The notes beneath the pieces are model-generated. The model made no database searches. It was given only the letters and a program-made list of their open reading frames with translations, and was not told where the DNA came from. From contig NIVC01004692.1 of NCBI GenBank assembly GCA_002269645.1, forward strand, positions 1 through 37,910: a DNA stretch of 37,910 bases, given 5' to 3'. The translations under genes and the position numbers were made by a program. The first letter of the stretch is position 1; each line of letters begins with the position of its first letter. Below are positions 2,498 to 36,589 of this stretch, piece by piece. Source of the DNA: Macrostomum lignano (Eukaryota).

Positions 2498-5400
2498 TTA
2501 GGTCTGCGGCAGATAGTGCTCAACCCGTTCGAGCAGTGAATCAGAGTAGCCGGGGCTGTAGTACTTCACAATCTCCTCCGGGTAGCAGTTGTTGATGGTG
2601 TTGATGTACTCCGCTAGAGCGCTGCCCGGCTCCGCTCTGATCTCCTGGATCTTCTTCAGCCCGCCTGAGGTGACGAACAGTCGGCGGGACTTGGGATTGT
2701 GCGGCAGCACCTTGCTGAACTGGGCCACCACGTGCTTGAGGATGTTGGCCGGGGCTTCTTGGAGCAGCGGCTCCAGAGCCTCGAGGTGGACGCACTTTTG
2801 AAGGATGTGTTTCAGCGCTTTCTTGGACTGCCAAGGTTAGGGTTTGAGGAAGTGGTTTACTCAGGATTCTTCAGGTAATACTCAGGATTTACATCTTCAG
2901 GTAATACTCAGGATTTACATCTTCAGGTAATACTCAGGATTTACATCTTCAGGTAATACTCAGGATTTACATCTTCAGGTAATACTCAGGATTTACATCT
3001 TCAGGTAATACTCAGGATTTACATCTTCAGGTAATACTCAGGATTTACATCTTCAGGTAATACTCAGGATTTACATCTTCAGGTAATACTCAGGATTTAC
3101 ATCTTCAGGTAATACTCAGGATTTACATCTTCAGGTAATACTCAGGATTTACATCTTCAGGTAATACTCAGGATTTACATCTTCAGGTAATACTCAGGAT
3201 TTACATCTTCAGGTAATACTCAGGATTTACATCTTCAGGTAATACTCAGGATTTACATCTTCAGGTAATACTCAGGATTTACATCTTCAGGTAATACTCA
3301 GGATTTACATCTTCAGGTTTCTTAAGACTCCAATTATCAGTCATTTAGACACTTGGAGTCACTTAGAACATTGCAGGTAGTTATCGCAATCGCAATCCTC
3401 ACCTTGATCTGCAGATCCTCGCTAACATCGGGCCTCAAATAAGCTCTGAGCAGTTTGGGCAGCACATTGGCCTGAGCAACAGCCTTGGCGTGCTCGGCGA
3501 GTGGCGGCCAATCTGGCCCAGAGACCAGGCCGCCGCAGCCTGGATGTGGTCCTCAGACTCGGTTTGCAGGACCGCGTCCAACGTTAGTACACCCTGCGGA
3601 TGGGGGGGGCACGATCGTGATCTTAGGCTTTTGAAAGAATTGAGAAAATAAGCGCAGCGTGGGAGAGGCGGGATGGGGGAGCGGGGGCGGCAGCCAATGG
3701 AGGGTTTTGGGCTACGAGGCAACCCCCATTTATTACTAGACTTGTAAAATATACGAGCTATATTTTAACTGCACTACTTACACTACAGATATCAGTAGAC
3801 AAACTTGAAAATTTAATTTTTATACAAATGTAGCTCGTAAATGTAATTGCACATGTAAATAGCTTATGAAGAACGTGTTAATAAATCGAGACGGGGATTT
3901 CAGACACAAGCTCACACAGGGTGCACAGGGGCCCTGACTTTCTAATCGTCAGGCATGTACAGTCTCCGTGCCTTTGGGAATGAAAATGAACTCCAGGCAC
4001 TCATTTTAGCGCCACAGGCACTCATTTTAGCGCCGCAGGCACTCATTTTAGCGCCGCAGGCACTCATTTTAGCGCCGCAGGCACTCATTTTAGCGCCGCA
4101 GGCACTCATTTTAGCGCCGCAGGCACTCATTTTAGCGCCGCAGGCACTCATTTTAGCGCCGCAAGCACTCATTTTAGCGCCACAGGCACTCATTTTAGCG
4201 CCGCAGGCACTCATTTTAGCGCCGCAGGCACTCATTTTAGCGCCGCAGGCACTCATTTTAGCGCCGCAGGCACTCATTTTAGCGCCGCAGACACTCATTT
4301 TAGCGCCGCAGGCACTCATTTTGTCGCCCCGTTGGCGACGCCTCCATAGTTAATCCCCAGACAGATTATGTCTGTTAAAAATTACCCTGGACACAATGAC
4401 AGCCATGGCCAGATTCTCAGAGTGGGCGGCCACATATCCAAGCATCATGACTCCCGGCAGGCGGACGTTCCCTCGACTGTCGCCGACAAAATCGACAATG
4501 GCGGCAACTCCGCCCGCATTCACAATGAGCTGCGACAGCTCAGGCGTGTGCTTGGCAACCTCGCGGATGAGGGTGGCGCAGTTCTTGCGAACATATTCGT
4601 CCGGGTCCTTCAGGCAGGTCAGCACAGCCGGGAAGATTTCGGCTTCGACCACCATTTCGGCCAGATCGACGGAGTGCTTGGAGATCTGGGCGAGGGCTGA
4701 GAACACCTGGCGCTTCAGCTTGGCGTCAGGGTTCAGCACCATCTGGGCCAAGTGGGCGATCGCGCCTGGTATCGGGGGAGGCAGGGGACGGAGATTTTAA
4801 TGGATTTTTCTCTTGCATTCTTATAATAATTTTCCACTTTCATCTCCCCTCTCATCTCCCCCTCTCATCTCCCCTCCCATCTTTACTCTCATCTCCAATC
4901 CCATCTCCCCTCTCATCCCCTCTCATCTCCCCTCCCATCTTCACTCTCATCTCCCCTCCCATCTTCACTCTCATCTCTCCTCCCATCTCCCCACCCATCT
5001 CGCCTCTCACCCCCCTCTCATCCTCTTTCCTCACCCCCCTCTCATCCCCCCTCATCCCTCTCTCACCCCTTCTCATCTCCCCTCTCATCCCCCTTCTCAT
5101 CTCCTCTCTCAACACCTCTCATAACGCCTCTTATCTCTTCTATCATGAGATTAGATGAGAAATATAGCAGTCTGACTCTTATTCCTCTCTTTCTTCCATA
5201 GATTGTCCAAATCCCCATCCCGTTCCAAACTTCCTCCCAACTCACCAGCGTCCACCACAGTCTGGGCGAGCTCTGGCGAGTGCTTAGAAATGTCGGACAG
5301 GGCCGAGGCGGCGATCCGCTTGAGGCTGAGGTCGGGCTCCTGCACGCACAGCACCAGGAGCGGCACCGCGCCAGCGTCCACCACAGCCTGGGCGAGCTCC

Positions 5401-7272: not shown

Positions 7273-8553
7273 ATCAAAAAGTAAAACAAATGAAACAAAA
7301 TTGACATAATTTTTGCACAAACGTTATTTAATTACGTTATTAAATTAAAGTATAGTTAGTTTTTTAGTAGGAAATTATTTTCTACACACTTTCAAATGAA
7401 GTAGATTCGGCAGTACAACAGTACAACATCAATCAACGACCATTTGAATTCATTTATTAGTTTATTTCACTGCAGTTTTATGGATTATACTTATAACTTT
7501 AGTAAGCATGATAGAATTGTTTGATTACACTTAATGAGTTTCTAATTATCTACATATGTATACTGGGCACACTTCCGCTAAATTCCGTTTTTTCAGTTTC
7601 GCTTATTTAATTTTAGTCTGCTCTTAGCAGCTCCTCGTATGTAATGCGTGAATTCTTTCAACTGCTCTTACAGCAAGCGCCGAACATAGCGTTCAACATA
7701 GGCACTGTTGCACATTGTTCATTTGTGCATGATCTTGCTTTATTATAGTCATTACTCAGATATTGTCATACAACAATGCTGAGTAGTATCTATAATATTT
7801 AGTGAATGTGCCAAATAACGCTAGGCCACACGCATAATTTTAGGACGATCGGGTGGCCAATGATCCACCTTGCTTATTTACAAACCGTCTCGCATGTTAG
7901 GCTGCCCGTGCAATGAAGCAGATTTAATATTGTCGCTCGAACTCTGCCGGTATAACCCCTGAGGCCCTGACTACAAATAGCTAGAGGACCCATATGCGCG
8001 CGGCAACACGAAAAGGCGAGCTTAGGGACGGGGGTCTAGGACAGGGGCCAGGTATGGCGTATAGAAGATTGTAGAAAACTCGTTCAATTCAAGCCATATC
8101 TTGCGCACAGACTTCGAGTCGAGAGAATTCTAAACCGATCAATAATAAAATGACACCAGGCCACTGATTCCCAACCCCTCGACCCATGTACATTTATATA
8201 TATACTCATCCACGATCTTACCTTCACTGCAATGGGCCCCAGTAATATTGTGCAAGCCCCGACCGAACCTCTCCACCCCAAGCGGGTGGGGGGGGGCACA
8301 GGGGGGTGGGTACAGAATAAAGGCCCGGGACCCTCCCCTCTAAACATGCACACACTGGCACAGAAAAATTATGACGTAACAATTGCTTTCCAATAGTCTG
8401 TCTGCTTCTTCTTCTGACTATATATTTCTTAAGCCTTAAGTTGCATTGGCACACTGAGCTAAAACTCTAAACAGGTCGAGCCTTTAATAGTTCTATATAT
8501 ATTCGTCAATACAGTGGGAAGATAGGATTAACCTTTTGTGCTATTATAGAGCT

Positions 8554-10071
8554 ATGAAAGCGCACAATGAGCAGATTGAAAATGAGACTGAGGAGCAGCA
8601 GCAACTGCAGCAGCAATTGACCAGCAGCAGCAATGATCAGTCACCGTGTCTGTCAGCATCGACAGAATCTGTCCACTCAACGGGCTCAAGAGGTGTCCCC
8701 GAATGTCGAATTTGTCGCAGTTCATCAACGGAGCTTCGCCGAGTTGGCGACAAGCTTCACCGGGTGAAATGCGCCTGCACTGGCAGCCTGGAGCACCTGT
8801 GCGCCCAGTGCTACCAGCGCTATTACCTGGAACAGGAGTTGGAAAGGTGAGACATTTGAGAACTGATTTTGATCAACTTGCTGGGAATTGAGCCTTTTGT
8901 CTGCTGCCTTCCCAGCTGCCTTCCCAGCTCCCTTTCCTGCTGTCTTCCTTACTGCTTTCCCAGCTGACTTCGCATCTGTCTTACCAGCTACCTGATCTCA
9001 GCTATCTTTCTGCAGTAGCTTTCCCAGCTGTTTTCCCAGCTGTCTTACCGGCTGTTTTCCCAGCTGTCTTACTGGCTGTTTTCCCAGCTGTCTTACCGGC
9101 TGTTTTCCCAACTGTCTTATCAGCTGTTTTCCCAACTGTCTTATCAGCTGTTTTCTTAGCTGTCTTACCGGCTGTTTCCCAGCTGTCTTACCAGCTGCTT
9201 TCCCAGCTGTATTACCAGCTGCTGCTTTCCCAGCTGTCTTACCAGCTGCTTTCCCAGCTGTCTTACCAGCTGCTGCTTTCCCAGCTGTCTTACCATCTGT
9301 TTTCCTAGCTGTCTTACCAGCTGTTTTCCTAGCTGTCTTACCAGCTGTTTCCCAGCTGTCTTACCAGCTGTTTCCCAGCTGTCTTACCAGCTGATTTCCC
9401 AGCTGCCTTCTCTGCATTCCTGGTAATCTTCGAGGATGGCCCAACAACTGAGGATCTGTGGGAGGCTATCTTTCTCAAGCAGCCTGCAGCTCTATAAACA
9501 GCCTTCACTTCCAAGACCCTGTCTCTCTTGCAGATGCGAAATCTGTCGCCAGCCGATTGACATCGAGGAGAGCAACCCCGCGGCCAGGGCTCTGCTGAAG
9601 CTCCGACTTCGCTGCCGCTGCCGCCCCGGTTCCTCGTCGTCTGACGGGTCCCACAGAAGTCGACGCAATGACAGCGGCTGCATTGAGGGCCGCTTCCTGG
9701 CTTACGCCTGCTTCGTTCTAATAGTCTTTGTCGTAGTCTTTATCATATTCTTTGTCGCTGGGGAGAAGCTTCAGCAGCGAAGGCGCCTCAGGCAGCTGGC
9801 GGCACCCGGAGGAGTTGATGATGAAGCCTCGACAGCCGTCACAACGGCGCCGACGAGACCGATGTCGGATTCTGAGCGCCGAGTTGAAGCTGTGGTGTTC
9901 GCCGCGGTGGCCTGCATCAACGTGGCCATCGCGTTGATGTACATGGCCTGGCGGAGTTGCGGCAGCTGCGAGCGGCGCCGTCGACACCACAGTCAGTTTC
10001 CACAACAGCGGTCAGGTGACCGCGACGTGGAGGCTGTTGAGCGAATTGCTAACGAAAATCTAAGGGCTTGA
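8554..10071 (+). CDS. MARCH-like membrane E3 ubiquitin ligase: N-terminal RING-variant domain plus two predicted TM helices
   Basis: Exon 8554-8846 (MKAHNEQ...CRIC...CACTGSLEHLCAQCYQRYYLEQELE) joins through a phase-2 GT-AG intron (8847-9533) to exon 9534-10071 (RCEICRQPI...FLAYACFVLIVFVVVFIIFFVAG...VEAVVFAAVACINVAIALMYMAW...*). The splice completes the RING ligand set. An AG acceptor 4 nt before the ATG suggests an upstream exon or leader. Confidence 0.8.
8900..9405. repeat. About 22-24-bp degenerate minisatellite (cccagctgtcttaccagctgtttt), intron of the MARCH-like gene
   Basis: Direct reading. Confidence 0.9.
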
Positions 10072-10149
10072 ATATTAGCTAAGTAGGTAATTATATCTTA
10101 ATCAATTGTGACTAATTTTTAGGATCAGAATTTAACGTTCAGCAGGGGA

Positions 10150-12831
10150 ATTTGGGGATCAGAGTTTTACCTGAGGAATTTGGGGATCAGAGTTTAACCT
10201 GAGGAATTTGGGGATCAGATTGTTTTACCTGAGGAATTTGGGGATCAGAGTTTTATTTGAGGAACTTGGGGATCAGAGTTTTACCTGAGGAATTTGGGGA
10301 TCAGAGTTTTACCTGAGGAATTTGGGGATAAGAGTTTTACCTGAGGAATTTGGGGATCAGAGTTTTACCTGAGGAATTTGGGGATCAGAGTTTTACCTGA
10401 GGAACTTGGGGATCAGAGTTTTACCTGAGGAATTTGGGGATCAGAGTTTTACCTGAGGAATTTGGGGATCAGATCGTTTTACCTGAGGAATTTGGGGATC
10501 AGAGTTTTACCTGAGGAATTTGGGGATAAGAGTTTTACCTGAGGAATTTGGGGATCAAAGTTTTACATGAGGAATTTGGGGGATCAGAGTTTTACCTGAG
10601 GAATTTGGGGATCAGAGTTTTATTTGAGGAACTTGGGGGATCAGAGTTTTACCTGAGGAATTTGGGGATCAGAGTTTTATTTGAGGAACTTGGGGATCAG
10701 AGTTTTACCTGAGGAATTTGGGGATCAGAGTTTTACCTGAGGAATTTGGGGATCAGAGTTTTACCTGAGGAATTTGGGGATCAGATTTTTACCTGAGGAA
10801 TTTGGGGGATCAGAGTTTTACCTGAGGAATTTGGGGGATCAGAGTTTTACCTGAGGAATTTGGGGATCAGTGTTTTACCTGAGGAATTTGGGGATCAGAT
10901 CGTTTTACCTGAGGAATTTGGGGATCAGAGTTTTACCTGAGGAATTTGGGGATCAGATCGTTTTACCTGAGGAATTTGGGGATCAGATCGTTTTACCTGA
11001 GGAATTTGGGGATCAGAGTTTTACCTGAGGAATTTGGGGATCAGATCGTTTTACCTGAGGAATTTGGGGATAAGAGTTTTACCTGAGGAATTTGGGGATC
11101 AGAGTTTTACCTGAGGAATTTGGGGATCAGAGTTTTACATGAGGAATTTGGGGATCAGATCGTTTTACCTGAGGAATTTGGGGATCAGATCGTTTTACCT
11201 GAGGAATTTGGGGATCAGAGTTTTACCTGAGGAATTTGGGGATCAGAGTTTTACCTGAGGAATTTGGGGATCAGAGTTTTACATGAGGAATTTGGGGATC
11301 AGATCGTTTTACCTGAGGAATTTGGGGGATCAGAGTTTTACCTGAGGAATTTGGGGATCAGATCGTTTTACCTGAGGAATTTGGGGATCAGATCGTTTTA
11401 CCTGAGGAATTTGGGGATCAGATCGTTTTACCTGAGGAATTTGGGGATCAGATCGTTTTACCTGAGGAATTTGGGGATCAGAGTTTTACCTGAGGAATTT
11501 GGGGATCAGATCGTTTTACCTGAGGAATTTGGGGATAAGAGTTTTACCTGAGGAATTTGGGGATCAGAGTTTTACCTGAGGAATTTGGGGATCAGAGTTT
11601 TACCTGAGGAATTTGGGGATCAGAGTTTTACCTGAGGAATTTGGGGATCAGAGTTTTACCTGAGGAATTTGGGGATCAGAGTTTTACATGAGGAATTTGG
11701 GGATCAGATCGTTTTACCTGAGGAATTTGGGGATCAGATCGTTTTACCTGAGGAATTTGGGGATCAGAGTTTTACCTGAGGAATTTGGGGATCAGAGTTT
11801 TACCTGAGGAATTTGGGGATCAGAGTTTTACATGAGGAATTTGGGATCAGATCGTTTTACCTGAGGAATTTGGGGATCAGAGTTTTACCTGAGGAATTTG
11901 GGCATCAGATCGTTTTACCTGAGGAATTTGGGCATCAGATCGTTTTACCTGAGGAATTTGGGGATCAGATCGTTTTACCTGAGGAATTTGGGGATCAGAT
12001 CGTTTTACCTGAGGAATTTGGGGATCAGAGTTTTACCTGAGGAATTTGGGGATCAGATCGTTTTACCTGAGGAATTTGGGGATAGAGTTTTACCTGAGGA
12101 ATTTGGGGATCAGATCGTTTTAACCTGAGGAATTTGGGGATCAGATCGTTTTACCTGAGGAATTTGGGGATCAGATCGTTTTACCTGAGGAATTTGGGGA
12201 TCAGAGTTTTACCTGAGGAATTTGGGGATCAGATCGTTTTACCTGAGGAATTTGGGGATCAGATCGTTTTACCTGAGGAATTTGGGGATCAGAGTTTTAC
12301 CTGAGGAATTTGGGGATCAGATCGTTTTACCTGAGGAATTTGGGGATAAGAGTTTTACCTGAGGAATTTGGGGATCAGATCGTTTACCTGAGGAATTTGG
12401 GGATCAGATCGTTTTACCTGAGGAATTTGGGGATCAGATCGTTTTACCTGAGGAATTTGGGGATCAGAGTTTTACCTGAGGAATTTGGGGATCAGATCGT
12501 TTTACCTGAGGAATTTGGGGATAAGAGTTTTACCTGAGGAATTTGGGGATCAGAGTTTTACCTGAGGAATTTGGGGATCAGATCGTTTTACCTGAGGAAT
12601 TTGGGGATAAGAGTTTTACCTGAGGAATTTGGGGATCAGAGTTTTACCTGAGGAATTTGGGGATCAGATCGTTTTACCTGAGGAATTTGGGGATCAGATC
12701 GTTTTACCTGAGGAATTTGGGGATCAGAGTTTTACCTGAGGAATTTGGGGATCAGATCGTTTTACCTGAGGAATTTGGGGATCAGAGTTTTACCTGAGGA
12801 ATTTGGGAATCACAGTTTTACCTGAGGAATT
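10150..12831. repeat. 2.7-kb satellite of interspersed 28-bp (gaggaatttggggatcagagttttacct) and 30-bp (…gatcagatcgtttt…) units, about 90 copies
   Basis: Direct reading. Lies between two convergent genes. Confidence 0.97.
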
Positions 12832-13422
12832 CCTTGACTATCACCACAAATACCTCACTATAACATTTATGTACATTAATGTATATCTTGTCTAAGCAAA
12901 TTTATGTAACTTTGCATTATTCAATAACAATAAGTATTTTCATGTACATTTTTCTAGTTTTATTTAATTAGTACTTTTAACAGTTTTTCTCATTTAAACT
13001 TTAAAGGGTTTTGTAATTTGTATTCAAAATCTGTACATAAAGCATTACTTGTTTATCTTGCTCAGTAGTAACATTGCCATTTCAAAAAAAATCTTCCAGT
13101 ATAACAAAAGCGATTTGTTGTTGTATTTCGTCTCCTAACAAACAGTTGACTTTATCTGATCAACTATCGATATTTCTTTATCTATCATTTTTTTCTACTG
13201 TAACAAAAAAGCCAAGTTTTTTCTGTCGAAATAAATAAAAAAGAGCCGATAATATTGCTTTTTGTTTTAATAATGCAGCACGTCAAAAAGTTGTTGATAT
13301 TGAATGAAAAATAAACCCTCTCGTTGGATAAACTTGTTTTAATTGGTTAAACATTTCATCCTCTCAATCCAGTTCAAATCCAATAGGTCATTTAAGGTCA
13401 CCGAATAGAATCGTTATCAAAA

Positions 13423-16400
13423 TTAGCAGAGGACCGATTTGCCCCGACGATTGGTTGCCATGGCAACCAGGGCAGCGCCGCCGGCAATTCCAAATTGGGC
13501 GAAGTCCGCCGAGTAGCTGCAAGATGAAACCGGGTGCTTAAATTATTCGGTGCCTGCATGCGTATTTCTAGATTTGTTGAAGCAGTTCGATCAAAATTTT
13601 ATTAGACATCCCGTCTCAATTCCAGCCTTAGAAGATAAGGATGAGATACAGGAGCCTATTCAGAATAACAGCTATGAGCGTTCCTGAAACTCGTGATATA
13701 TCAGCATTCCTGAATCTCATATATGAAGATTCCTGATTCTCATATATCTGAATTTCTGAATCTCCTATATCAGAATATGAAACATTCCCGAATCTTTTAT
13801 ATTACCATTCCTGAATCCCATATATATGAGCATTCCTGAATCTCACCTATGAGCATTCCTGAATCTCACCTATGAGATTCCTGAATCTCACCTATGAGCA
13901 TTCCTGAATCTCACCTATGAGCATTGCTGAATCTCACCTATGAGCATTCCTGAATCTCACCTATGAGCGTTTCTGAATCTCACCTATGAGCGTTCCTGAA
14001 TCTCACCTATGAGCGTTCCTGAATCTCACCCTACAAGATGACACAATGAAACCCACCTCGAAACAGCTCCCACAGCTGAGCCAATCTGCCACAGAATCTT
14101 CTGTTTGAGTGAAGCGCTCGGCACTTGACGGGTCAGTTCGTCGGAGGCCAGCAAAGTGGACAAGGTCTTGTCGAAATTGACGGTCGGCTGACTCGGTAGC
14201 GACACAGTCTGATGATCAGGTTTGCCAAGTGAGATGAGTCGAGAGCTGTTAAGAACGGAGGGCTCTTCAATAACGACGTCGAACTTAGTGCTGGATGATT
14301 TTGTGCTGAGCACCGGCTGGGAGCCAAAATTGGTAACGCGCTTTGACTGCTTGGACAAATGGACTCGCTCCGCAGCCATAGTCAGGCGTCGGTCGTTCGA
14401 CACGGAACGACGTTCTCGTGACAGCCGTCGGTCCATCGACACAACGCGACGCTCAGCAGCTCTAGTCAGACGTCGGTCAGTCGACACAGCGCGACGCTCA
14501 GCAGCTCTAGTCAGACGTCGGTCAGTCGACACAGCGCGACGCTCAGCAGCCCTAGTCAGACGCAGGTCAGTCGACACGGAACGACGCTCTCGTGACAGCC
14601 GTCGGTCAGTCGACACAGCGCGACGCTCAGCAGCTCTAGTCAGACGTCGGTCAGTCGACACAGCGCGACGCTCAGCAGCTCTAGTCAAACGTCGGTCAGT
14701 CGACACAGCGCGACGCTCAGCAGCCCTAGTCAGACGTCGGTCGACACGGAACGACGCTCTCGTGACAGCCGTCGGTCAGTCGACACAACGCGACGCTCAG
14801 CAGCTCTAGTCAGACGTCGGTCAGTCGACACAGCGCGACGCACAGAAGCCTAGAGAGGCGTCGGTCGTTCGACACGGAACGACGCTCAGAAGCTCTAGTC
14901 AGCCGTCGGTCAGTCGTCACAGCGCGACGCTCAGCAGCTCTAGTCAGGCGTCGGTCGTTCGACACGGAGCGACGCTCTCGTGACAGCCGTCGGTCATCGA
15001 CACAGCGCGACGCTCAGCAGCTCTAGTCAGACGTCGGTCGTTCGACACGGAACGACGCTCTCGTGACAGCCGTCGGTCCATCGACACAGCGCGACGCTCA
15101 GCAGCTCTAGTCAGACGTCGGTCAGTCGACACAGAACGACGCTCTCGTGACAGCCGTCGGTCAGTCGACACAGCGCGACGCTCAGCAGCTCTAGTCAGAC
15201 GTCGGTCAGTCGAGACAGCGCGACGCTCAGCAGCTCTAGTCAGACGTCGGTCAGTCGACACAGCGTGACGCTCAGCAGCCTTAGTCAGACGTCGGTCGTT
15301 CGACACGGAACGACGCTCTCGTGACAGCCGTCGGTCCATCGACACAGCGCGACGCTCAGCAGCTCTAGTCAGACGTCGGTCAGTCGACACTGCGCGACGC
15401 TCAGCAGCTCTAGTCAGACCTCGGTCGTTCGACACGGAACGAGGCTCTCGTGACAGCCGTCGGTCAGTCGACACAGCGCGACGCTCAGCAGCTCTAGTCA
15501 GACGTCGGTCAGTCGACACAGCGCGACGCTCAGCAGCCTAGTCAGACGTCGGTCGTTCGACACGGAACGACGCTCTCGTGACAGCCGTCGGTCCATCGAC
15601 ACAGCGCGACGCTCAGCAGCTCTAGTCAGACGTCGGTCAGTCGACACAGCGCGACGCTCAGCAGCTCTAGTCAGGCGTCGGTCGTTCGACACGGAACGAC
15701 GCTCTCGTGACAGCCGTCGGTCCATCGACACAACGCGACGCTCAGCAGCTCTAGTCAGACGTCGGTCAGTCGACACAGCGCAACGCTCAGCAGCTCTAGT
15801 CAGACGTCGGTCAGTCGACACAGCGCGACGATCAGCAGCCCTAGTCAGACGTCGGTCGTTCGACACGGAACGACGCTCTCGTGACAGCCGTCGGTCAGTC
15901 GTCACAGCGCGACGCTCAGCAGCTCTAGTCAGACGTCGGTCAGTCGACACAGCCCGACGCTCAGCAGCTCTAGTTAGGCGTCGGTCGTTCGACACGGAGC
16001 GACGCTCTCGTGACAGCCGTCGGTCCATCGACACAACGCGACGCTCAGCAGCTCTAGTCAGACGTCGGTCAGTCGACACAGCGCGACGCTCAGCAGCTCT
16101 AGTCAGGCGTCGGTCGTTCGACACGGAACGACGCTCAGAAGCTCTAGTCAGCCGTCGGTCAGTCGTCACAGCGCGACGCTCAGCAGCTCTAGTCAGACGT
16201 CGGTCAGTTGACACAGCGCGACGCTCAGCAGCTCTAGTCAGGCGTCGGTCGTTCGACACGGAGCGACGCTCTCGTGACAGCCGTCGGTCCATCGACACAG
16301 CGCGACGCTCAGCAGCTCTAGTCAGACGTCGGTCGTTCGACACGGAACGACGCTCTCGTGACAGCCGTCGGTCCATCGACACAGCGCGACGCTCAGCAGC

Positions 16401-17455
16401 TCTAGTCAGACGTCGGTCGGTCGACACAGCGCGACGCTCAGCAGCTCTAGTCAGACGTCGGTCAGTCGACACAGCGCGACGCTCAGCAGCCTTAGTCAGA
16501 GGTCGGTCGTTCGACACAGAACGACGCTCTCGTGACAGCCGTCGGTCAGTCGACACAGCGCGACGCTCAGCAGCTCTAGTCAGACGTCGGTCAGTCGACA
16601 CTGCGCGACGCTCAGCAGCCCTAGTCAGACGTCGGTCGTTCGACACGGAACGACGCTCTCGTGACAGCCGTCGGTCAGTCGTCACAGCGCGACGCTCAGC
16701 AGCTCTAGTCAGACGTCGGTCAGTCGACACAGCGCGACGCTCAGCAGCTCTAGTCAGGCGTCGGTCGTTCGACACGGAGCGACGCTCTCGTGACAGCCGT
16801 CGGTCCATCGACACAACGCGACGCTCAGCAGCTCTAGTCAGACGTCGGTCAGTCGACACAGCGCGACGCTCAGCAGCTCTAGTCAGACGTCGGTCAGTCG
16901 ACACAGCGCGACGATCAGCAGCTCTAGTCAGACGTCGGTCAGTCGACACTGCGCGACGCTCAGCAGCCTAGTCAGACGTCGGTCGTTCGACACGGAACGA
17001 CGCTCTCGTGACAGCCGTCGGTCCATCGACACAGCGCGATGCTTAGCAGCTCTAGTCAGACGACGGTCAGTCGACACAGCGCGACGCTCAGCAGCTCTAG
17101 TCAGACGTCGGTCAGTCGACACAGCGCGACGCTCAGAAGCCCTAGAGAGGCGTCGGTCGTTCGACACGGAACGACGCTCAGAAGCTCTAGTCAGGCGTCG
17201 ATCGTTCGACACGGAACGACGCTCTCGTGACAGCGGACTGCTCTGTGGGAGCCTTCGCACATCAACTCTTGACTGACGAGCGTCATTCACTACCGAAGTC
17301 TTCCCGACATCCGACACAGAGATGCGGCTGCCCGGCTGTGGTCCAGCAGGAGCGGCATCTCCGGCGTTAACTCCGACTTCAGCGATGTGACAGTCGATTG
17401 TCTTCCTGGTCATGAAGACCAGAGTAATCAACAGCAGCAGCTTGACGTCCACCAT
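13423..17455 (-). CDS. Unknown secreted Arg-rich tandem-repeat protein, about 1,166 aa if five small deletions are corrected
   Basis: ATG at 17455 directly after a TTCCAG acceptor; MVDVKLLLLITLVFMTRKTIDC looks like a signal peptide. About 950 aa of STDRRLTRAAERRAV and S[MT]DRRLSRERRSV repeats follow, then a unique region, a donor at 14057 (AG|GTGGGT) and a phase-matched last exon 13516-13423 (SYSADFAQFGIAGGAALVAMATNRRGKSVLC*). Many inter-repeat substitutions are synonymous in this frame. Frame breaks at about 16968, 15538, 14996, 14850 (-1 each) and 14751 (-4). Confidence 0.7.
13795..14028. repeat. 23-bp minisatellite (gagcattcctgaatctcacctat), last intron of the Arg-rich gene; degenerate copies extend to about 13670
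   Basis: Direct reading. Confidence 0.9.
14375..17230 (-). repeat. Coding tandem array of mixed 45-bp and 39-bp units
   Basis: Units encode the 15-aa and 13-aa repeats on the minus strand. Confidence 0.95.
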
Positions 17456-18064
17456 CTGGAAGTGGAGAAAAGTTTGAGAAAATTTGACAGCTTTTAGATT
17501 AGTATTGCAAAAAAGCATGTTTTTCGAATATTTAATCCCTTTAGCATTTATCAATTTCTTAGCCAAGATACATGTACCGTCCCGGGAAAATTTCTGATCG
17601 AACAGTGCAAATTCGAACAAAATCGGTCAAGCCATTCAGGAGAAAATCGATTTCGTACAAACAAACAACTCATTTTTAGTACATAGGAAAAAGGTAGTTT
17701 TGCAGGAAGGTTGCTGGATCAGAGGATCCAGCTTTAGTGGGCACCTTAGGCTTGATAGGCATATATAGTATATTCACTAGGCCTCTTGGACGACAACTGG
17801 TCTGAAGTTTGTATACAATACTTGCCTGGCGATGAGAAAGTACCCGCATGCGTTTTGTACCAGTGTCTCCGCTTGCCTATACTTGCTGGCTCCGGGTCAA
17901 TTTTAGGCAAGGGTTGGCAAACTCCCGCGCGTGAAGGTTTTTTCGCTCAAGTCTGATGGTCTCTTCTCAGCTCTCTTCTTTCTTCTACTCTCCTCCCCTC
18001 TCTTCTCTCTATCTCCTCTCTCCCTTCTCCCTTTTCTCTTCTTTCCTCTCCTAGCCCGCAGTCA

Positions 18065-19547
18065 TTCGCAAGATTCGATATATTTCAATATTCAAAGATT
18101 CTATATGTATATCTATATCGCAATTAAAGATTCCATATCCATATCGCAAGATTCTATATCTATATCGCAAGATTCCATATCTATATCGCAAGATTCCATA
18201 TCTATATCGCAAGATTCCATATCTATATCGCAAGATTTCAAATCTATATCGCAAGATTTCAAATCTATATCGCAAGATTTCAAATCTATATCGCAAGATT
18301 TCAAATCTATATCGCAAGATTCCATATCTATATCGCAAGATTTCAAATCTATATCGCAAGATTCTATATCTATATCGCAAGATTCCATATCTATATCGCA
18401 AGATTCCATATCTATATCGCATGATTATATATCTATATCGCAAGATTTCAAATCTATATTGCAAGATTCTATATCTATATCGCAAGATTCCATATCTATA
18501 TCGCAAGATTCCATATCTATATCGCATGATTATATATCTATATCGCAAGATTCCATATCTATATCGCAAGATTCCATATCTATATCGCAAGATTCCATAT
18601 CTATATCGCAAGATTCCATATCTATATCGCAAGATTCCATATCTATATCGCAAGATTCCATATCTATATCGCAAGATTCCATATCTATAACGCAAGATTC
18701 CATATCTATATCGCAAGATTCCATATCTATATCGCAAGATTCCATATCTATATCGCAAGATTCTATATCTATATCGCAAGATTCCATATCTATATCGCAA
18801 GATTCTAATCTATATCGCAAGATTCCATATCTATATCGCAAGATTCCATATCTATATCGCAAGATTCCATATCTATATCGCAAGATTCCATATCTATATC
18901 GCAAGATTACATATCTATATCGCAAGATTCCATATCTATATCGCAAGATTCCAAATCTATATCGCAAGATTCCATATCTATATCACAAGATTCCATATCT
19001 ATATCGCATGATTCTATATATCTATATCGCAGGATTCTATATATAGCAAGATTCCATATCTATATCGCAAGATTCCATATCCATATCGCAAGATTCCATA
19101 TCTATATCGCAATTAAAGATTCCATATCTATATCGCAAGATTCCATATCTATATTGCAAGATTCCAAATCTATAACGCAAGATTCCATATCTATATTGCA
19201 AGATTCCATATCTATAACGCAAGATTCCATATCTATATCGCATGATTCCATATCTATATCGCAAGATTCTATATCTATAACGCAAGATTCCATATCTATT
19301 TGCAAGATTCCATATCTATATCGCAAGATTCCATATCCATATCGCAAGATTCCATATCTATATCGCAAGATTCTATATCTATATCGCAAGATTCCATATC
19401 TATATCGCAAGATTCCATATCTATATCGCAAGATTCCATATCTATATCGCAAGATTCCATATCTATATCGCAAGATTCCATATCTATATCGCAAGATTCC
19501 ATATCTATATCGCAAGATTCCATATCTATATCGCAAGATTCCATATC
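18065..19547. repeat. 21-bp minisatellite (gcaagattccatatctatatc), about 70 copies, probably in the 5'UTR intron of the Arg-rich gene
   Basis: Direct reading. It produces the SISISQD, YRYGILR and MESCDID ORF artefacts. Confidence 0.97.
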
Positions 19548-19665
19548 TGCTCGTATTTCCAGGAAAGCTCTAGACGAACTAAGTCTACGGAGAACACCGT
19601 GAACCTGCCGGTTAAAGTGCAATATGCAGTTCAGTTTAAAGGATATTACGAGTAGTTCAACTCAC

Positions 19666-19785
19666 CTTGGTAGACAGTTAGTTCAACAAAAATTATGCGC
19701 AGAAAGGTGCCAGAATCGAAAATTGATGAACTTGGTGAAAGGCAGTGAAGTCCGACTAGCGCCGCTACTGTCTGATATATATATA
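19666..19785 (-). promoter_or_regulatory. Candidate TATA-like element (19775-19785) and ATG-free 5'UTR exon ending in a strong donor AAG|GTGAGT at 19666, for the Arg-rich gene
   Basis: Splicing 19666 to 17455 gives CCAAG-ATG-G (A at -3, G at +4). There is no ATG between the TA run and the donor. Inference only. Confidence 0.45.
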
Positions 19786-22050: not shown

Positions 22051-25000
22051 TCACTCCGCCTTGCTGCGCGACCCAGCAAGGCCACGCTGTTGCCAAGCCC
22101 CAATTACCATAGACAGCAACGGTAACGAGCCAACCAGACAGATTAGGTAAACAATCAAAATCCCCATAGCAACTAATTTGTCGCTAATTGCCACAGTATC
22201 TACAGTCAGATTAACGGCTCCCGTAAGCAGATTAGCCAATAGGAAATAAGCCAGACTACACCGGCCAATCAGAGCTAGCACAGGCGAACACGACCGATCG
22301 ATGGAGCCGAGGCAGAGCAGCCGGCCGATGGTGAGCATCAACAGCACCTGACAGCAGGCGGCTAGGCAGGTGATCAGGAATCCGGCATTGAACAGAAGCC
22401 GAGAAGGCTCAGTTACGATAGGCGGCAACTTGACAGAGGCCACAGTCAGGGCCCATGGCAGGGCCACGATGGCTAGCAGTAGCAGGGGCCACGAGATCAG
22501 GCGGTTGGCGTCTGGGATGACGAGAGGATTGAATAATTCTATTGTAGCGGTTAACTGTTAGTTTATTTCAGAAACTTGTGCTATAGATCACTATAGATCG
22601 TATGATATAGACATCCTAATACAAAAATTGATTGTTTATAGACAACATTGATCATAGTCTATAGAAACGCTATAGAGATCCCAGTCTATAAACACGTCAT
22701 ATAGATCCTAGAGTATAAAAAACGCCATATATAAATAGATCCCAGTCTAAACACGCGCTATATATAGATAGATCCCAGTCTATAGATACACTACATAGAT
22801 CCCAGTCTATAGATACACTACATAGATCCACTACATAGATACACTACATAGACGCTATTATTCTGGTGCTTGACTGGGTGCTACGGACTGCTCTGCCTTC
22901 CAACGACGACGGCTTCCTGCTGCGGCGACGCGTGGGTCGACGCCAACCGGAGAGACGGCTCAGCGTGCTTGGCTACGCCGATGACCTCGCCCTGCTGTCC
23001 TCGACCGTCGAGGGCGCCCAACGACAGCTGGATAGGCTGGTTGCCGTTGCGGCGAGCGTCGGCCTGGTGGTCAACACGCAGAAGACCGTCGTGCTATGCG
23101 TGCCGGACGACACCGAGGTTGCAATCTTCTGCCGAGGCGCTGACGGACAGGCGAGTGAGCTTCCAAGATGTCAGCAGTTCGTCTACCTCGGCGGTCTGGT
23201 TCCCGACGTTCGCGAGGATCTGCGGCGTCGCCGAGGACTTGCCTGGGCTGCCTTTCGTTCTATAAGGTCAGTCCTGCAGTCCGAGGCCCTACCGGACCGC
23301 CAGAGGGCGGCGCTGTTCCAGGCGGTGATCGAAACCGTCCTGTTATACAACGCCGAGACCTGGACGCTGACAGACTCGCTCGAGGCTCAAGTCGACGCGG
23401 CGCACGCTGGCCTGCTGCGCGCCGCCTTCAAGATCGGCAACGAGCGAGTCACCAACATGGCGCTCTACCATCGCGCCGGCCTGGCCCGTCCTAGCGATCT
23501 GCTGCGCCGTTGGCGACTCCAGCTGGCAGGCCACGTCATCCGCGCCGAGGCCTACTGTCCGGAGCCGGTGCAGGAGGTGCTGCTACTTACGTTGCAGGCA
23601 CCCTACCGGCGGGGACAAGCGAGGACACGGCGCTACGTCGACTGTCTGCTGGCTGACGCCGGCGCCCCGGACTCTGCCGGCGGTGCGGCCTTTGTTTGCG
23701 CCCAAGCTTCGAAGCGTGCCATCTGACGTTGCTTTTTACGACCCGGCAGCGTACTCTGTTGTTTTGTTGTATAGATCCCAGTCTATAGATACACTACATA
23801 GATCCCAGTCTATAGATACACTACATAGATCCCAGTCTATAGATACACTACATAGATCCCAGTCTATAGATACACTACATAGATCCCAGTCTATAGATAC
23901 ACTACATAGATCCCAGTCTATAGATACACTACATAGATCCCAGTCTATAGATACACTACATAGATCCCAGTCTATAGATACACAACATAGATCCCAGTCT
24001 ATAGATACACTACATAGATCCCAGTCTATAGATACACTACATAGATCCCAGTCTATAGATACACTACATAGATCCCAGTCTATAGATACACTACATAGAT
24101 CCCAGTCTATAGACACGCCATATATTGATTCCATTCTATAGAGTATAGATACACTATATAGATCCCAATATATAGAAATACTATATAGATCCGGGTCTTT
24201 AGACACGCTATATAGAGCATGGTCTATAGACACGCTGCGCATAGAGTAAGATCTCAGTCTTACGATGTCTAAAGATCTCAATCTCTAGACACGCTAGAGA
24301 TACCAGCCTAGCAATGAAACCCTGTTGCACCTGCAGCAGTCGACTCAGTTCCGACGCGCAATCGTCGACCAATAGCGGCGCCGGCGCAATAGATGGCGCA
24401 GTAGGGCGGCAGCGACATCAGGCCCTCCTTGTTGGCCACCAGCGGCCACAACAGGTGCCGATCGCCGCTAGCCAAAAGAAACTCGGCCCCACCGAACGGC
24501 AGCACCAGGAGGCAGTGTCCGGCGGCGAGAACCAGCGACCAGAGCCCCGGCCGGCCGGACAACGCAGGCCAGACCGCTCGGAGACAGGCCAGGGTGATGA
24601 AGAAGTTCCAGTGCACTCCATACTCGGTGACGTGCTCCTGCGTGTCGTGGATTGTTTGGTGGGAGGCGGGGTTGTTAGCCTTCATCCACAACAACATCCT
24701 CGGAATAAAACGCCTCGAACGTATGTAAAATTCCAAACAAGATCATTAGCATAAAATCCCTAATAGATATACCTGTAGATATCCCCAAGATGAGAATTCC
24801 CCAATAAGATCCCCCACATGAAAAATCCCCAAAAATATCCCCAAGATGAGAAATCCCCAAATATCTTAAGGATGAGAAATCCCCAATAAGAAAAATCCAC
24901 CAAAATATCCCCTAAATGGGAAATCCCCAAAATTTCCCTAAGATGGAAATTCCCAAAAATATTCGCTAGATTAGAAATCCAAATCTCAAGCAAAAATCCT

Positions 25001-25463
25001 CGAATAGAAAAATCCCTTTAAAAGATCCCAGGATATTACCTGATAATTCGAAGCCTTCACAGCCAGAGTCCTCGCCAGTCCGAGCAGCGCCAGCGGCAGA
25101 CAGGCGCCAACCAGGGATCGGCGCCATCGCGACATTGAAAACGGAGTCGGCGCCGGCGCCAGCAAGCCGCTGGCGAAGGCGAACGCCGGAGCGCCGACGT
25201 CCATGAGACCGACGCCGGCGGACTCGGCCTTGGCCAAGCGGCGGGGCATGGCCGGGAAATCCACGGCCAGAATGGCGACGGACGTCTGCAGCAGCAGGAG
25301 GGCCTGCAGAATGAAGGGTGGGCGGGGATTGTCCGTGTAACCTCTTTTCTTGATGAATCTGTGTGCTTCGGGCAAAGTGTGCGTCTGTCTGTCCGTCTGT
25401 CTATTTGCTTGTCTATCTGTCTGTCTGTCTGTGTCTGTCTGTCTGTGTCTGTCTGTCTATCTA

Positions 25464-25546
<83 letters not shown>

Positions 25547-25611
25547 GTGTCTGTCTGTCCCTCTGTCTGTCTGTCTGTCTTTCTGTCTATTTGCGTGTCT
25601 ATCTGTCTGTG

Positions 25612-25646
<35 letters not shown>

Positions 25647-26073: not shown

Positions 26074-26438
26074 AAATTTCGAACGTATTAATCAACAGGT
26101 AGCTGGAGAACAGGCAGTAGAGATAGCGGAACCAGACCAGCTGACTGAGGTGGTGCCGCATGCAGCGCAGCGGCGTCAGGAGGCGGCTGGGAAGCGTGAC
26201 GAAGAGGGCCGTCGCCGGCGAGGGGTCCGAATGCGACAGAGAATGCTCCAGCAGGGCCGGCAGGATGGCCAGGACACCTGCAAGGCGTTTGTGAACGAAA
26301 AGAGTGGCGCTCGGTTAGGCTACGATGTGTCTGCGTTGTGAGAGCGGCCGCTTGATTGACAGACAGACAGAGAAACACGGACAAGCATAAATAATGGACA
26401 GCAAGAGAGAAGCAGGCAGACAGCCGGAGACATACACT

Positions 26439-26520
<82 letters not shown>

Positions 26521-26525
26521 CACAA

Positions 26526-26566
<41 letters not shown>

Positions 26567-36534: not shown

Positions 36535-36589
36535 CTGCAGTTGGCAACGGTTTGATATTGCTGCTTTAGGGTAACTTAGAATTGGGGAT

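What the first reader, a model, noticed from the sequence alone, without database searches (positions are those of the whole stretch)
13423..17455. Undescribed ~1,170-aa secreted, highly cationic Arg-repeat protein with signs of purifying selection
Seen: signal-peptide-like N-terminus, about 70 repeats of two interleaved units (STDRRLTRAAERRAV, net about +3, and S[MT]DRRLSRERRSV), a unique Ser/Thr-rich segment, and a small hydrophobic Gly/Ala last exon ending RRGKSVLC*. Unit variants often change only third codon positions in this frame (AGA/AGG, CGT/CGC/CGG, CTG/TTG/CTA, GCT/GCA, TCC/TCT, ACT/ACC), unlike the neighbouring non-coding satellites. RR pairs recur every 6-8 residues. Inference: either a polycationic structural/adhesive or secretory-granule protein (Macrostomum adhesive protein ap1 is likewise a secreted Lys/Arg-rich repeat protein, but I see no sequence identity), or a polyprotein cut at dibasic sites into short peptides (LTRAAE, AVSTD, LSRE, SVSND). 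I recognise no family.
Basis: partly seen in the sequence, partly recalled or inferred. Interest (0 to 1): 0.75.

Follow-up and report, generated by a model that had tools for sequence, protein, structure and literature searches.

The report
Arginine-rich repeat protein gene, Macrostomum lignano
This is a real, transcribed gene found only in the flatworm Macrostomum lignano, encoding a roughly 1,170-residue, extremely positively charged repeat protein of unknown function; its reading frame looks broken in this window only because of assembly errors.

Summary
The window is Macrostomum lignano DNA. The minus-strand feature at 17455-13423 is the annotated but uncharacterised locus Mlig000613, held in databases only as fragmentary "hypothetical proteins".

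Confirmed:
- A signal-peptide-like start.
- 66 tandem units: 47 of 15 aa and 19 of 13 aa (one a degenerate end unit).
- A Ser-rich linker.
- A spliced Gly/Ala-rich last exon.

Not as described:
- The window has no continuous 1,170-aa ORF. Five frameshifts interrupt it. A near-identical Mlig_3_7 contig (1 substitution against about 12 indel events) has all five positions intact, so they are probably long-read assembly errors.
- The tail "RRGKSVLC" is one of three assembly versions.
- The third-codon-position excess is real (p about 0.008) but equally strong in the co-phased antisense frame. Other evidence assigns the strand.

New:
- Published RNA-seq tables show thousands of reads, highest in the head fragment. 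Expression is not testis-, ovary- or tail-specific and is equal in hatchlings and adults.
- No homologue was found outside M. lignano, and there is no Pfam or PDB match.
- The repeats are predicted to form one long helix with an arginine face (33% Arg, net about +200).
- A 17-21-residue TM-like segment precedes a short tail.

Best reading: a polycationic helical rod in the secretory pathway, possibly membrane-anchored, that binds polyanions. Function is untested.

The parts
19659..19672 (-). Putative donor site ending an upstream non-coding exon (CAAG|GTGAGT, exon end 19666). Untested.
   Evidence: Sequence. If it is spliced to 17455, an in-frame TAA lies 4 codons upstream of the ATG. No transcript data were available here.
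17456..19665 (-). Putative first intron, containing a 21-bp satellite (18127-19548).
   Evidence: TRF. The acceptor ...cttccag|ATG is at 17457-17456. The satellite shows no codon-phase bias.
17390..17455 (-). Start codon and signal-peptide-like N-terminus MVDVKLLLLITLVFMTRKTIDC.
   Evidence: Kyte-Doolittle window 1.3-1.4 over residues 1-25. Identical to the start of NCBI PAA52942.1. No dedicated signal-peptide predictor was available.
17210..17389 (-). Unique N-terminal segment (residues 23-82).
   Evidence: Translation. Only M. lignano proteins match it.
14360..17209 (-). Coding tandem array of 66 units (45-nt and 39-nt), with higher-order repeats of 129 and 174 nt. 33.5% Arg, net charge about +193.
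   Evidence: A 172-aa sample is predicted by AlphaFold2 (single sequence) as one continuous helix, pLDDT 93.9. The hydrophobic-moment peak at 100 degrees is coherent along the array.
16966..16970 (-). Frameshift 1 in the window: GGG->GG in ctgactagGGctg.
   Evidence: L001 (NIVC01003160.1) has the extra G and stays in frame.
15536..15540 (-). Frameshift 2: the same G-run loss.
14993..14997 (-). Frameshift 3: tcgatGGacc -> tcgatGacc.
14848..14852 (-). Frameshift 4: G-run loss in ctctagGGctt.
14739..14743 (-). Frameshift 5: 4-nt loss (AACA is present in L001).
14057..14359 (-). Unique Ser/Leu/Lys/Thr-rich linker (about 100 aa, one NSS sequon), predicted largely disordered.
   Evidence: AF2 model of P0002: pLDDT 52, coil over residues 31-87. 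An exhaustive HMMER search found only M. lignano matches to it.
13517..14056 (-). Last intron (GT...AG), containing a 23-bp satellite (13681-14030).
   Evidence: The junction is used by the transcript-derived models P0002 and P0020.
13423..13516 (-). Last coding exon as read in the window: SYSADFAQFGIAGGAALVAMATNRRGKSVLC*, a TM-like Gly/Ala-rich segment plus a short tail.
   Evidence: The segment lies inside a predicted helix (130-155) in the AF2 model.
13398..13455 (-). Zone of three homopolymer indels that decide the C-terminal tail. In the sister contigs the reading frame ends at TGA 13400-13398.
   Evidence: Three-way alignment. ORF 13398..13559. P0002 and P0003 end ...IVGANRSSANFDNDSIR.
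13266..13343 (-). Two ATTAAA hexamers in the presumed 3'UTR (13343-13338 and 13271-13266).
   Evidence: Sequence only.

Best explanation
The feature is one real protein-coding gene of Macrostomum lignano, transcript cluster Mlig000613. Current annotations split it into a 5' and a 3' fragment because short reads and long-read consensus both fail inside its 2.85-kb coding array.

The five frameshifts in the window are most likely assembly indels (inferred).

The intact product is about 1,166-1,215 aa, with these parts in order:
- A secretory signal-like N-terminus.
- An 80-aa unique segment.
- 66 Arg-rich 15/13-residue units.
- A roughly 100-aa Ser-rich, probably disordered and glycosylatable stalk.
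- A 17-21-residue Gly/Ala-rich hydrophobic segment.
- A 9-13-residue tail.

This is the layout of a type I membrane protein. It would be a secreted protein if the last segment does not span the membrane or is shed.

The repeat region is predicted to be a long alpha-helix. The unit lengths (15+15+13 = 43 and 15+15+15+13 = 58 residues, about 12 and 16 helical turns) keep the arginines on one face and Leu/Ala/Val/Asp/Glu on the other.

I infer that it works electrostatically. A rod, or rod bundle, with about +200 net charge would bind and condense polyanions such as sulfated glycans or mucus, granule contents or microbial surfaces. This would occur in a somatic, anteriorly enriched cell type present from hatching.

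Shown: gene structure, transcription, composition, and absence of homologues in the libraries searched. Inferred: topology, helix, binding function.
For: Organism and annotation:
- Only M. lignano proteins match: PAA52942.1, PAA52941.1, PAA51429.1, A0A1I8FIM9 and A0A1I8FC25.

Frameshifts as assembly errors:
- Window against L001 (NIVC01003160.1) over about 4.1 kb shows 1 substitution against about 12 indel events.
- All five window frameshifts are filled in L001.
- The L001 ORF runs 837 aa from the ATG.
- L001 has its own, different indels.
- Window against L002 differs by only 3 substitutions outside satellites in about 8 kb.
- Mlig_3_7 is a Canu PacBio assembly polished with short reads (PMC5730564).
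- After restoring 8 bases the CDS has no stop and gives 1,166 aa, 28.6% Arg, net +203, pI 12.

Transcription:
- The annotation is RNA-seq derived.
- Positional counts A/B/C/D are 2749/1652/1575/1254 (g13), 551/271/246/168 (g3) and 761/475/416/338 (g4). The class is Non-Specific.
- Adult against hatchling log2FC is -0.24, not significant.
- The gene is absent from the held neoblast/germline tables.

Coding strand:
- The sense frame has no stop-creating variants.
- The antisense frame carries a TGA created by a substitution.
- Differences between unit types are conservative in sense (LTRAAERRAV against LSR--ERRSV, with Arg kept through AGA->CGA) and radical in antisense.
- Splice sites and the annotated models lie on this strand.

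Structure:
- AF2 predicts a continuous helix, pLDDT 93.9.
- The hydrophobic moment is maximal at exactly 100 degrees for every window length tested up to the whole 948-aa array. Same-sign charge pairs dominate at i+4 and i+7, 110 and 248.
- The C-terminal segment FAQFGIAGGAALVAMAT(IVGA) lies in a predicted helix. Its Kyte-Doolittle mean is about 1.25 for the window version and about 1.7 for the 21-residue sister version (my hand calculation).
Against: - No experiment or dedicated predictor confirms the signal peptide, the TM segment or the topology.
- The AF2 model is single-sequence. AF2 readily draws helices for charged repeats. With few i/i+4 opposite-charge pairs (18), a free helix carrying +3 per unit may be unstable without counter-ions.
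- The selection signal is modest: 37 events, not independent, and equally good on the antisense frame.
- The three contigs derive largely from the same PacBio data, so agreement between them is not fully independent. Real frameshifts in some copies cannot be excluded.
- The expression site is known only at body-fragment resolution.
- The function is entirely inferred from composition.
Confidence: 0.45

Rival explanations
1. Polyprotein or prohormone. The precursor enters the secretory pathway and is cut by proprotein convertases. Cutting at the 17 RERR (R-x-R-R) sites would give 43-58-residue cationic helical peptides, possibly antimicrobial. Cutting at all 124 RR pairs would give 4-6-residue peptides (LTRAAE, AVSTD, LSRE, SVSND).
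For: - Signal-like N-terminus.
- 124 RR pairs and 17 minimal furin motifs, spaced exactly one per higher-order repeat.
- Head-biased expression would fit the brain or anterior glands.
Against: - No Gly-basic amidation motif anywhere: G[KR][KR] = 0, and one Gly in 949 repeat residues.
- The repeats are followed by a stalk and a TM-like segment, which soluble prohormones lack.
- Sixty-six copies is well beyond the usual number (my knowledge).
- The units form one uninterrupted predicted helix rather than peptide-plus-spacer modules.
- No peptidomic data were available.
Confidence: 0.12
2. Decaying or non-functional locus. A GC-rich minisatellite with a period divisible by three expanded inside a young orphan gene. 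The frameshifts are real and transcripts are made, but no full-length protein is.
For: - The window ORF is broken five times. L001 is broken twice at other places, and L002 is broken many times.
- The genome is saturated with minisatellites.
- No homologue outside the species was found.
- The selection signal is only p about 0.01.
Against: - Breaks are not shared between near-identical contigs. Nearly all are homopolymer indels, with an indel:substitution ratio of about 12:1. This is the signature of long-read consensus error.
- No substitution creates a stop in 66 units.
- There is an excess of synonymous change.
- Transcript counts are high.
Confidence: 0.1
3. A cohesive or adhesive secretory protein of the tail duo-gland adhesive organs, functionally like Mlig-ap1.
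For: Same species. Secreted-type, extremely cationic and repetitive, as are the KR regions of Mlig-ap1 (PMC6410801).
Against: - Not tail-enriched. D_C is -0.33 to -0.58 and the class is Non-Specific, with the highest counts in the head fragment.
- Arg-only, with almost no Lys or Pro.
- No vWD, EGF, C-type lectin or TIL domains.
Confidence: 0.04
4. The array is translated from the opposite (+) strand in the co-phased frame (TARRSAALVRRRSVD / TERRSRDSRRSID).
For: That frame is also largely open. It shows an equally strong synonymous excess: 20 against 17, p=0.0025.
Against: - A TGA created by a substitution interrupts it inside the array in both assemblies.
- Differences between unit types are radical in that frame.
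- There is no ATG or flanking coding context.
- The transcript-derived gene models and GT-AG sites are on the minus strand.
Confidence: 0.02

Closest known systems
Mlig-ap1, the cohesive protein of the M. lignano adhesive organ (Wunderer et al. 2019, PMC6410801)
   Same: Same species. Secretory-type protein with very long, extremely cationic repetitive regions and no homologues outside flatworms. Proposed to act through charge interactions with polyanions.
   Different: - ap1 is 5,407 aa. Its Lys+Arg regions include Pro (antigen peptide SRKPRRKNRKSRKP). It has C-type lectin, vWD/C8/TIL and 17 EGF modules, and it is expressed in tail adhesive glands.
- The protein here has 33.5% Arg but 0.3% Lys and 0.2% Pro in the repeats. 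It has no Pfam domain. It has a TM-like C-terminus. Its RNA is head-biased, not tail-biased.
Multi-copy neuropeptide or prohormone precursors
   Same: A signal-like N-terminus followed by many tandem short units bounded by dibasic RR sites.
   Different: No amidation Gly. No acidic spacers. A stalk plus hydrophobic segment follows the repeats. Sixty-six units. The repeat region is predicted as one continuous helix.
ER/K single alpha-helix (SAH) domains and other highly charged helical rods such as trichohyalin (from my knowledge)
   Same: Low-complexity, highly charged repeats predicted as one very long helix.
   Different: SAH domains are near-neutral and are stabilised by i/i+4 Glu-Lys/Arg pairs in cytoplasmic proteins. 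Here the net charge is +3 per unit, with only 18 opposite-sign i+4 pairs against 110 same-sign pairs, in a secretory-pathway context.
Mucin-like type I membrane proteins (signal peptide, tandem-repeat ectodomain, Ser/Thr stalk, TM, short tail)
   Same: The same overall order of parts.
   Different: The repeats are Arg/Ala-rich and helical rather than Pro/Thr/Ser-rich and extended. There is no SEA domain or other mucin domain.
Protamines and sperm nuclear basic proteins
   Same: Very high arginine content.
   Different: Those are small, lack signal peptides and are testis-specific. This gene is not testis-class and is equally expressed in hatchlings.

Membership tests
Mlig-ap1-type flatworm adhesive/cohesive protein | Lys+Arg-rich (KR) regions | tested here: not met
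   The repeats have 33.5% Arg but 0.3% Lys. The ap1 description is from PMC6410801.
Mlig-ap1-type flatworm adhesive/cohesive protein | vWD/C8/TIL, EGF and C-type lectin domains | tested here: not met
   No Pfam family at E<=0.1 in the N-terminus, repeats or C-terminus.
Mlig-ap1-type flatworm adhesive/cohesive protein | Expression restricted to tail adhesive glands | tested here: not met
   Published positional RNA-seq: class Non-Specific, counts fall from the head fragment to the whole worm, D_C negative. Resolution is body fragments only.
Multi-copy neuropeptide/prohormone precursor | N-terminal signal peptide | tested here: inconclusive
   A hydrophobic h-region LLLLITLVFM follows MVDVK. No SignalP-type predictor was available, and the cleavage site is unclear.
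Multi-copy neuropeptide/prohormone precursor | Repeated peptide units flanked by dibasic cleavage sites | tested here: met
   124 RR pairs and 17 RERR motifs.
Multi-copy neuropeptide/prohormone precursor | C-terminal Gly amidation donor before the basic site (common, not universal) | tested here: not met
   G[KR][KR] = 0. One Gly in 949 repeat residues.
Multi-copy neuropeptide/prohormone precursor | Processed peptides detectable | not testable with these tools
   Needs peptidomics.
ER/K single alpha-helix (SAH) domain | Long continuous helix | tested here: met
   AF2 single-sequence model: helix over residues 2-171, pLDDT 93.9. Prediction only.
ER/K single alpha-helix (SAH) domain | Balanced charge with abundant i/i+4 opposite-charge pairs | tested here: not met
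   Net +193 over 949 residues. At i+4 there are 18 opposite-sign against 110 same-sign pairs.
Mucin-like type I membrane protein | Signal peptide, tandem-repeat ectodomain, then TM and a short cytoplasmic tail | tested here: inconclusive
   The order of parts fits. The hydrophobic segment is 17-21 residues with a Kyte-Doolittle mean of 1.25-1.7, depending on which assembly's tail is right. It is helical in the AF2 model at low confidence.
Mucin-like type I membrane protein | Pro/Thr/Ser-rich, heavily O-glycosylated repeats | tested here: not met
   The repeats have 0.2% Pro and are Arg/Ala-rich.
Protamine / sperm nuclear basic protein | Testis-specific, small, no signal peptide | tested here: not met
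   Class is not Testes. Equal in hatchlings and adults. About 1,170 aa with a hydrophobic N-terminus.

The most novel reading that the evidence does not exclude
The protein is a new kind of electrostatic device. It would be a membrane-tethered alpha-helical rod, about 950 residues and of the order of 100-150 nm if fully helical. Mixing 15- and 13-residue units keeps its repeat arithmetic close to whole helical turns (43 residues is about 12 turns, 58 residues about 16 turns). This would lay a near-continuous stripe of about 320 arginines along one face. The result would be a polycation 'brush' or granule-condensing scaffold unique to Macrostomum, working by reversible binding of sulfated glycans, mucus or microbial surfaces.
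Probability: 0.2. Interest if true: 0.6.

Novelty: new variant of a known kind. Interest (0 to 1): 0.35.

Why it matters
**Practical value.** The locus shows how coding minisatellites are mis-annotated in long-read flatworm assemblies. One highly expressed gene of about 1,170 aa appears in databases only as two or three partial "hypothetical proteins", plus frameshifted UniProt entries (one of them misnamed as a kinesin-domain protein). A corrected model makes the gene usable for in situ hybridisation and RNAi in a tractable model animal.

**Biological value.** A secretory-pathway protein with about +200 net charge and a predicted arginine-faced helix is unusual. After Mlig-ap1, it could be a second example in M. 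lignano of function through bulk charge, but in anterior somatic tissue rather than in the adhesive organ. It does not bear on a long-standing open question, and its function is wholly untested.

Tried and rejected
- **Pfam on N-terminus + 5 units + C-terminus.** Only noise hits (E 0.3-0.6).
- **PDB sequence search with 172 aa of repeats.** No hit at E<=1.
- **Word-indexed search of 5.8 billion proteins and exhaustive HMMER over 1.84 billion representatives.** Only M. lignano entries match the unique parts. The other 14 hits (P0005-P0019) are unrelated low-complexity repeat proteins (sequences checked for the top ones).
- **Codon-position test as proof of the coding strand.** Rejected, because the co-phased antisense frame scores equally well. 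The strand was assigned on other grounds.
- **dN/dS between paralogous contigs.** Impossible. L001, L002 and the window differ by 1-3 substitutions outside satellites.
- **Structure search (fold search).** Not run. One model is a single featureless helix and the other has pLDDT 52, so matches would be meaningless.
- **Full-text search for 'Mlig000613'.** No paper mentions it in the main text.
- **Supplements of PMC5730564 and PMC5816591.** No mention in the text held. Those files may be truncated.
- **Search for a published M. lignano single-cell atlas or rhabdite protein chemistry.** Nothing usable, so the idea that this is a basic rhabdite or rhammite protein remains my speculation only.
- **Stop-codon absence as evidence.** Only about 1.5 stop-creating variants would be expected by chance (my rough estimate), so zero is not significant.


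Full report
**What is in the sequence**

On the minus strand, an ATG at 17455 lies directly after a pyrimidine-rich tract and an AG (…cttccag|ATGGTG). It opens MVDVKLLLLITLVFMTRKTIDC…, a short basic n-region followed by ten hydrophobic residues. After 82 unique residues a tandem array begins at 17209 and runs to 14360. Tandem Repeats Finder reports periods of 45, 129 and 174 nt.

I parsed 66 units:
- 47 fifteen-residue units: 28 of type T (S-T-D-R-R-L-T-R-A-A-E-R-R-A-V) and 19 of type N (S-N-D…).
- 19 thirteen-residue units (S-[MT]-D-R-R-L-S-R-E-R-R-S-V), one of them a degenerate end unit.
- The commonest arrangements are N-T-M (43 aa) and N-T-T-M (58 aa).

A unique Ser-rich stretch of about 100 aa follows (14360-14057). 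Next come a GT…AG intron holding a 23-bp satellite (14056-13517) and a last exon (from 13516) encoding SYSADFAQFGIAGGAALVAMAT….

**The reading frame is not intact in the window**

The longest open piece is 483 aa. The repeat frame hops five times. Four hops are single-base losses in G runs, near 16968, 15538, 14995 and 14850. The fifth is a 4-nt loss near 14741.

**Whose DNA it is and what is annotated**

A search with the N-terminus, five units and the C-terminus returned only Macrostomum lignano entries:
- PAA52942.1 (BOX15_Mlig000613g1, partial): the N-terminus plus the first repeats.
- PAA51429.1 (g4) and PAA52941.1 (g3, partial): the last repeats plus the C-terminus.
- UniProt A0A1I8FC25.

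An exhaustive HMMER scan of 1.84 billion representatives added only A0A1I8FIM9, again M. lignano, which carries the window's own tail. It also returned unrelated low-complexity proteins. Pfam and PDB gave nothing. The gene is therefore annotated only in fragments, is uncharacterised, and has no detectable relative in the libraries available here.

**The frameshifts are probably assembly errors**

The contig carrying g1 and g3 (NIVC01003160.1, locus L001) is the same locus in the Mlig_3_7 assembly.
- Across about 4.1 kb it differs from the window by one substitution and about twelve indel events.
- Every one of the five window frameshifts is filled in L001. Its ORF runs 837 aa from the ATG.
- L001 has two different breaks of its own and one extra 129-nt higher-order repeat.
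- A third near-identical contig (L002, NIVC01003432.1) ends inside the array and is riddled with indels there. Outside satellites it differs from the window by 3 substitutions in about 8 kb.

Breaks that are not shared, that sit at homopolymers, and that outnumber substitutions about 12 to 1 are what unpolished PacBio consensus produces. The assembly was made by Canu from PacBio reads and polished with short reads, which cannot be placed uniquely in such an array (PMC5730564).

Restoring the eight bases gives a stop-free CDS of 1,166 aa, with 28.6% Arg, net charge +203 and pI 12. With the L001 repeat it would be about 1,210 aa.

The same problem affects the C-terminus. Three homopolymers within 30 nt give three tails:
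- Window: …ATNRRGKSVLC*
- L002: …ATIVGANRSSANFDNDSIR*
- L001: …ATIVGQIGPLANFDNDSIR*

Site by site, the majority is the L002 version, but this is not settled.

**Is it transcribed?**

Yes, on published evidence.
- Mlig_3_7 gene models are built from RNA-seq (StringTie/TACO, TBONE, TransDecoder). A shared prefix denotes a 95%-identity transcript cluster (PMC5730564).
- In the re-analysed positional RNA-seq of Brand et al. 2020 (PMC7336406, Table S8), fragments A (head), B, C and D (whole worm) give the counts below, all classed Non-Specific.

| Transcript | A (head) | B | C | D (whole worm) |
|---|---|---|---|---|
| Mlig000613.g13 | 2749 | 1652 | 1575 | 1254 |
| Mlig000613.g3 | 551 | 271 | 246 | 168 |
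| Mlig000613.g4 | 761 | 475 | 416 | 338 |

- The normalised fall from A to D is 1.6-2.1 log units. This is steeper than for most other 'Non-Specific' genes on the same page of the table. It indicates anterior enrichment and no tail or gonad specificity.
- Adults and hatchlings do not differ: log2FC -0.24, not significant (PMC10092323).
- The gene is absent from the neoblast/germline tables held.

**Selection and strand**

Relative to unit consensus there are 37 distinct variants. Twenty fall at third positions and 19 are synonymous, against 31% expected (p=0.008; dN/dS about 0.4). The other two sense frames show no excess. Neighbouring satellites with periods divisible by three show no significant phase bias, though with few variants.

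The antisense frame whose third positions coincide with the sense ones (TARRSAALVRRRSVD) does just as well: 20 against 17, p=0.0025. The test therefore shows a triplet constraint but not the strand.

The strand follows from other facts:
- No variant creates a stop in the sense frame.
- A substitution (sense CGC->CAC near 15275) creates a TGA in the antisense frame in both assemblies.
- Differences between the two unit types are conservative in sense (Thr/Ser, Ala/Ser, Arg kept through AGA->CGA) and radical in antisense.
- The start codon, unique flanks, GT-AG sites and transcript models all lie on the minus strand.
- Most CpGs sit at codon positions 1-2, so CpG decay would not produce the third-position excess (my inference).

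**Anatomy of the protein and likely mechanism**

The repeats are 33.5% Arg, 13.7% Ala and 13.5% Asp+Glu, with almost no Lys, Pro, Gly or Cys. Their net charge is +193.

AlphaFold2 (single sequence) models 172 residues as one helix with pLDDT 93.9. The hydrophobic moment peaks at exactly 100 degrees per residue for all window lengths tested, from 18 residues up to the whole 948-residue array. Arg falls on one half of the wheel, and Leu/Ala/Val/Met/Asp/Glu/Thr on the other.

The arithmetic of the units fits this. A 15-mer advances the face by +60 degrees and a 13-mer by -140 degrees. N-T-M therefore nets -20 degrees and N-T-T-M nets +40 degrees. The whole array of 47 and 19 units nets only +160 degrees. 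This should not be over-read, because a small change in helical pitch would change the total.

Opposite-charge i/i+4 pairs are rare (18) and same-charge pairs are common (110). This is not an ER/K single helix, and a free helix would probably need counter-ions or self-association along the Leu/Ala seam (inference).

The C-terminal part is modelled at low confidence (pLDDT 52) as a disordered linker followed by helices. These include the Gly/Ala-rich segment. That segment is 17 residues followed by NRRGK in the window, or 21 residues (Kyte-Doolittle mean about 1.7, my calculation) in the sister contigs.

The order of parts (signal-like start, repeat domain, Ser-rich stalk, hydrophobic segment, short tail) is that of a type I membrane protein. 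I therefore commit to this reading: a polycationic helical rod in the secretory pathway, possibly membrane-tethered, that acts by binding polyanions.

My rough confidence by step:
- Real protein-coding gene: 0.85.
- Frameshifts are artefacts: 0.8.
- Membrane anchoring: 0.5.
- Polyanion-binding rod: 0.35.

**Rivals**

1. *Convertase-processed polyprotein.* It remains possible, given 124 RR pairs and 17 RERR motifs, one per higher-order repeat. It lacks any amidation Gly, has a TM-like end, and has no spacer architecture.
2. *Decaying orphan gene.* The pattern of non-shared homopolymer indels argues against it, but only accurate reads can exclude it.
3. *Tail adhesive function like Mlig-ap1.* The expression profile, composition and lack of domains argue against it.
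4. *Antisense coding.* The internal TGA argues against it.

**Verdict**

This is a genuine, well-expressed, lineage-restricted gene whose full length has been hidden by assembly error. It is not a member of any family I could test. As a kind of thing (a species-restricted tandem-repeat secretory or membrane protein) it is familiar. The Arg-only helical repeat with about +200 charge is an unusual variant. Interest is moderate (0.35).

Noticed in passing
window 1-37910: Extreme minisatellite density. TRF lists dozens of distinct arrays with periods of 11-64 bp, several of 0.5-2.7 kb (for example a 28-bp array at 10147-12831 and a 21-bp array at 18127-19548). Many lie in presumed introns or between genes. 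This fits the reported 15% simple/tandem repeat content of the M. lignano genome.
   Followed up: partly
window 22051-27367, minus strand: Two GPI-anchor biosynthesis genes sit next to each other on the same strand, just upstream of the repeat gene. They are GWT1/PIG-W exons (22051-22467, 24308-24736, 24986-25375, about 25700-26073) and PIG-L (26609-27367). (GTCT)n and (AGAC)n microsatellites at 25383-25659 and 26440-26876 lie inside open frames that span them. Whether these genes share a transcriptional unit with Mlig000613 was not tested.
   Followed up: partly
window 22866-23726 (+) and 22-753 (+): Two fragments of a non-LTR retroelement reverse transcriptase. One lies inside the GWT1 gene region (RVT_1, E 1e-5). 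The other, at the window start, is 42% identical to the first over about 130 aa.
   Followed up: partly
window 14222-17230, plus strand: The reverse complement of the coding array is also nearly open in the co-phased frame. It would encode a similar Arg-rich peptide (TARRSAALVRRRSVD). It is interrupted by one TGA, and it mimics the synonymous-site signal of the true frame. This is a caution for codon-phase tests on repeats.
   Followed up: yes
window about 14490 against L001 12005-12131: The Mlig_3_7 contig carries one additional higher-order repeat (127 nt as assembled, i.e. 129 minus 2) relative to the window. This is either array-length variation between copies or an assembly collapse.
   Followed up: no
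protein A0A1I8FIM9 (P0004): This UniProt entry is a frameshift-hopping model of the same C-terminus. It is named 'Kinesin motor domain-containing protein', which nothing in its 157 residues supports. The name is probably a propagation error.
   Followed up: no
window 4350-4751 (-), 34667-36547 (-), 8536-10071 (+): Other gene pieces in the window: an Armadillo/HEAT-repeat exon (Arm, E 2e-9), two exons of an inositol monophosphatase-family gene, and a Cys-rich ORF pair with hydrophobic segments flanking a 12/48-bp minisatellite at 8903-9410. The variants of that minisatellite show a weak phase bias [8,8,16], p=0.14, with no Pfam hit.
   Followed up: partly
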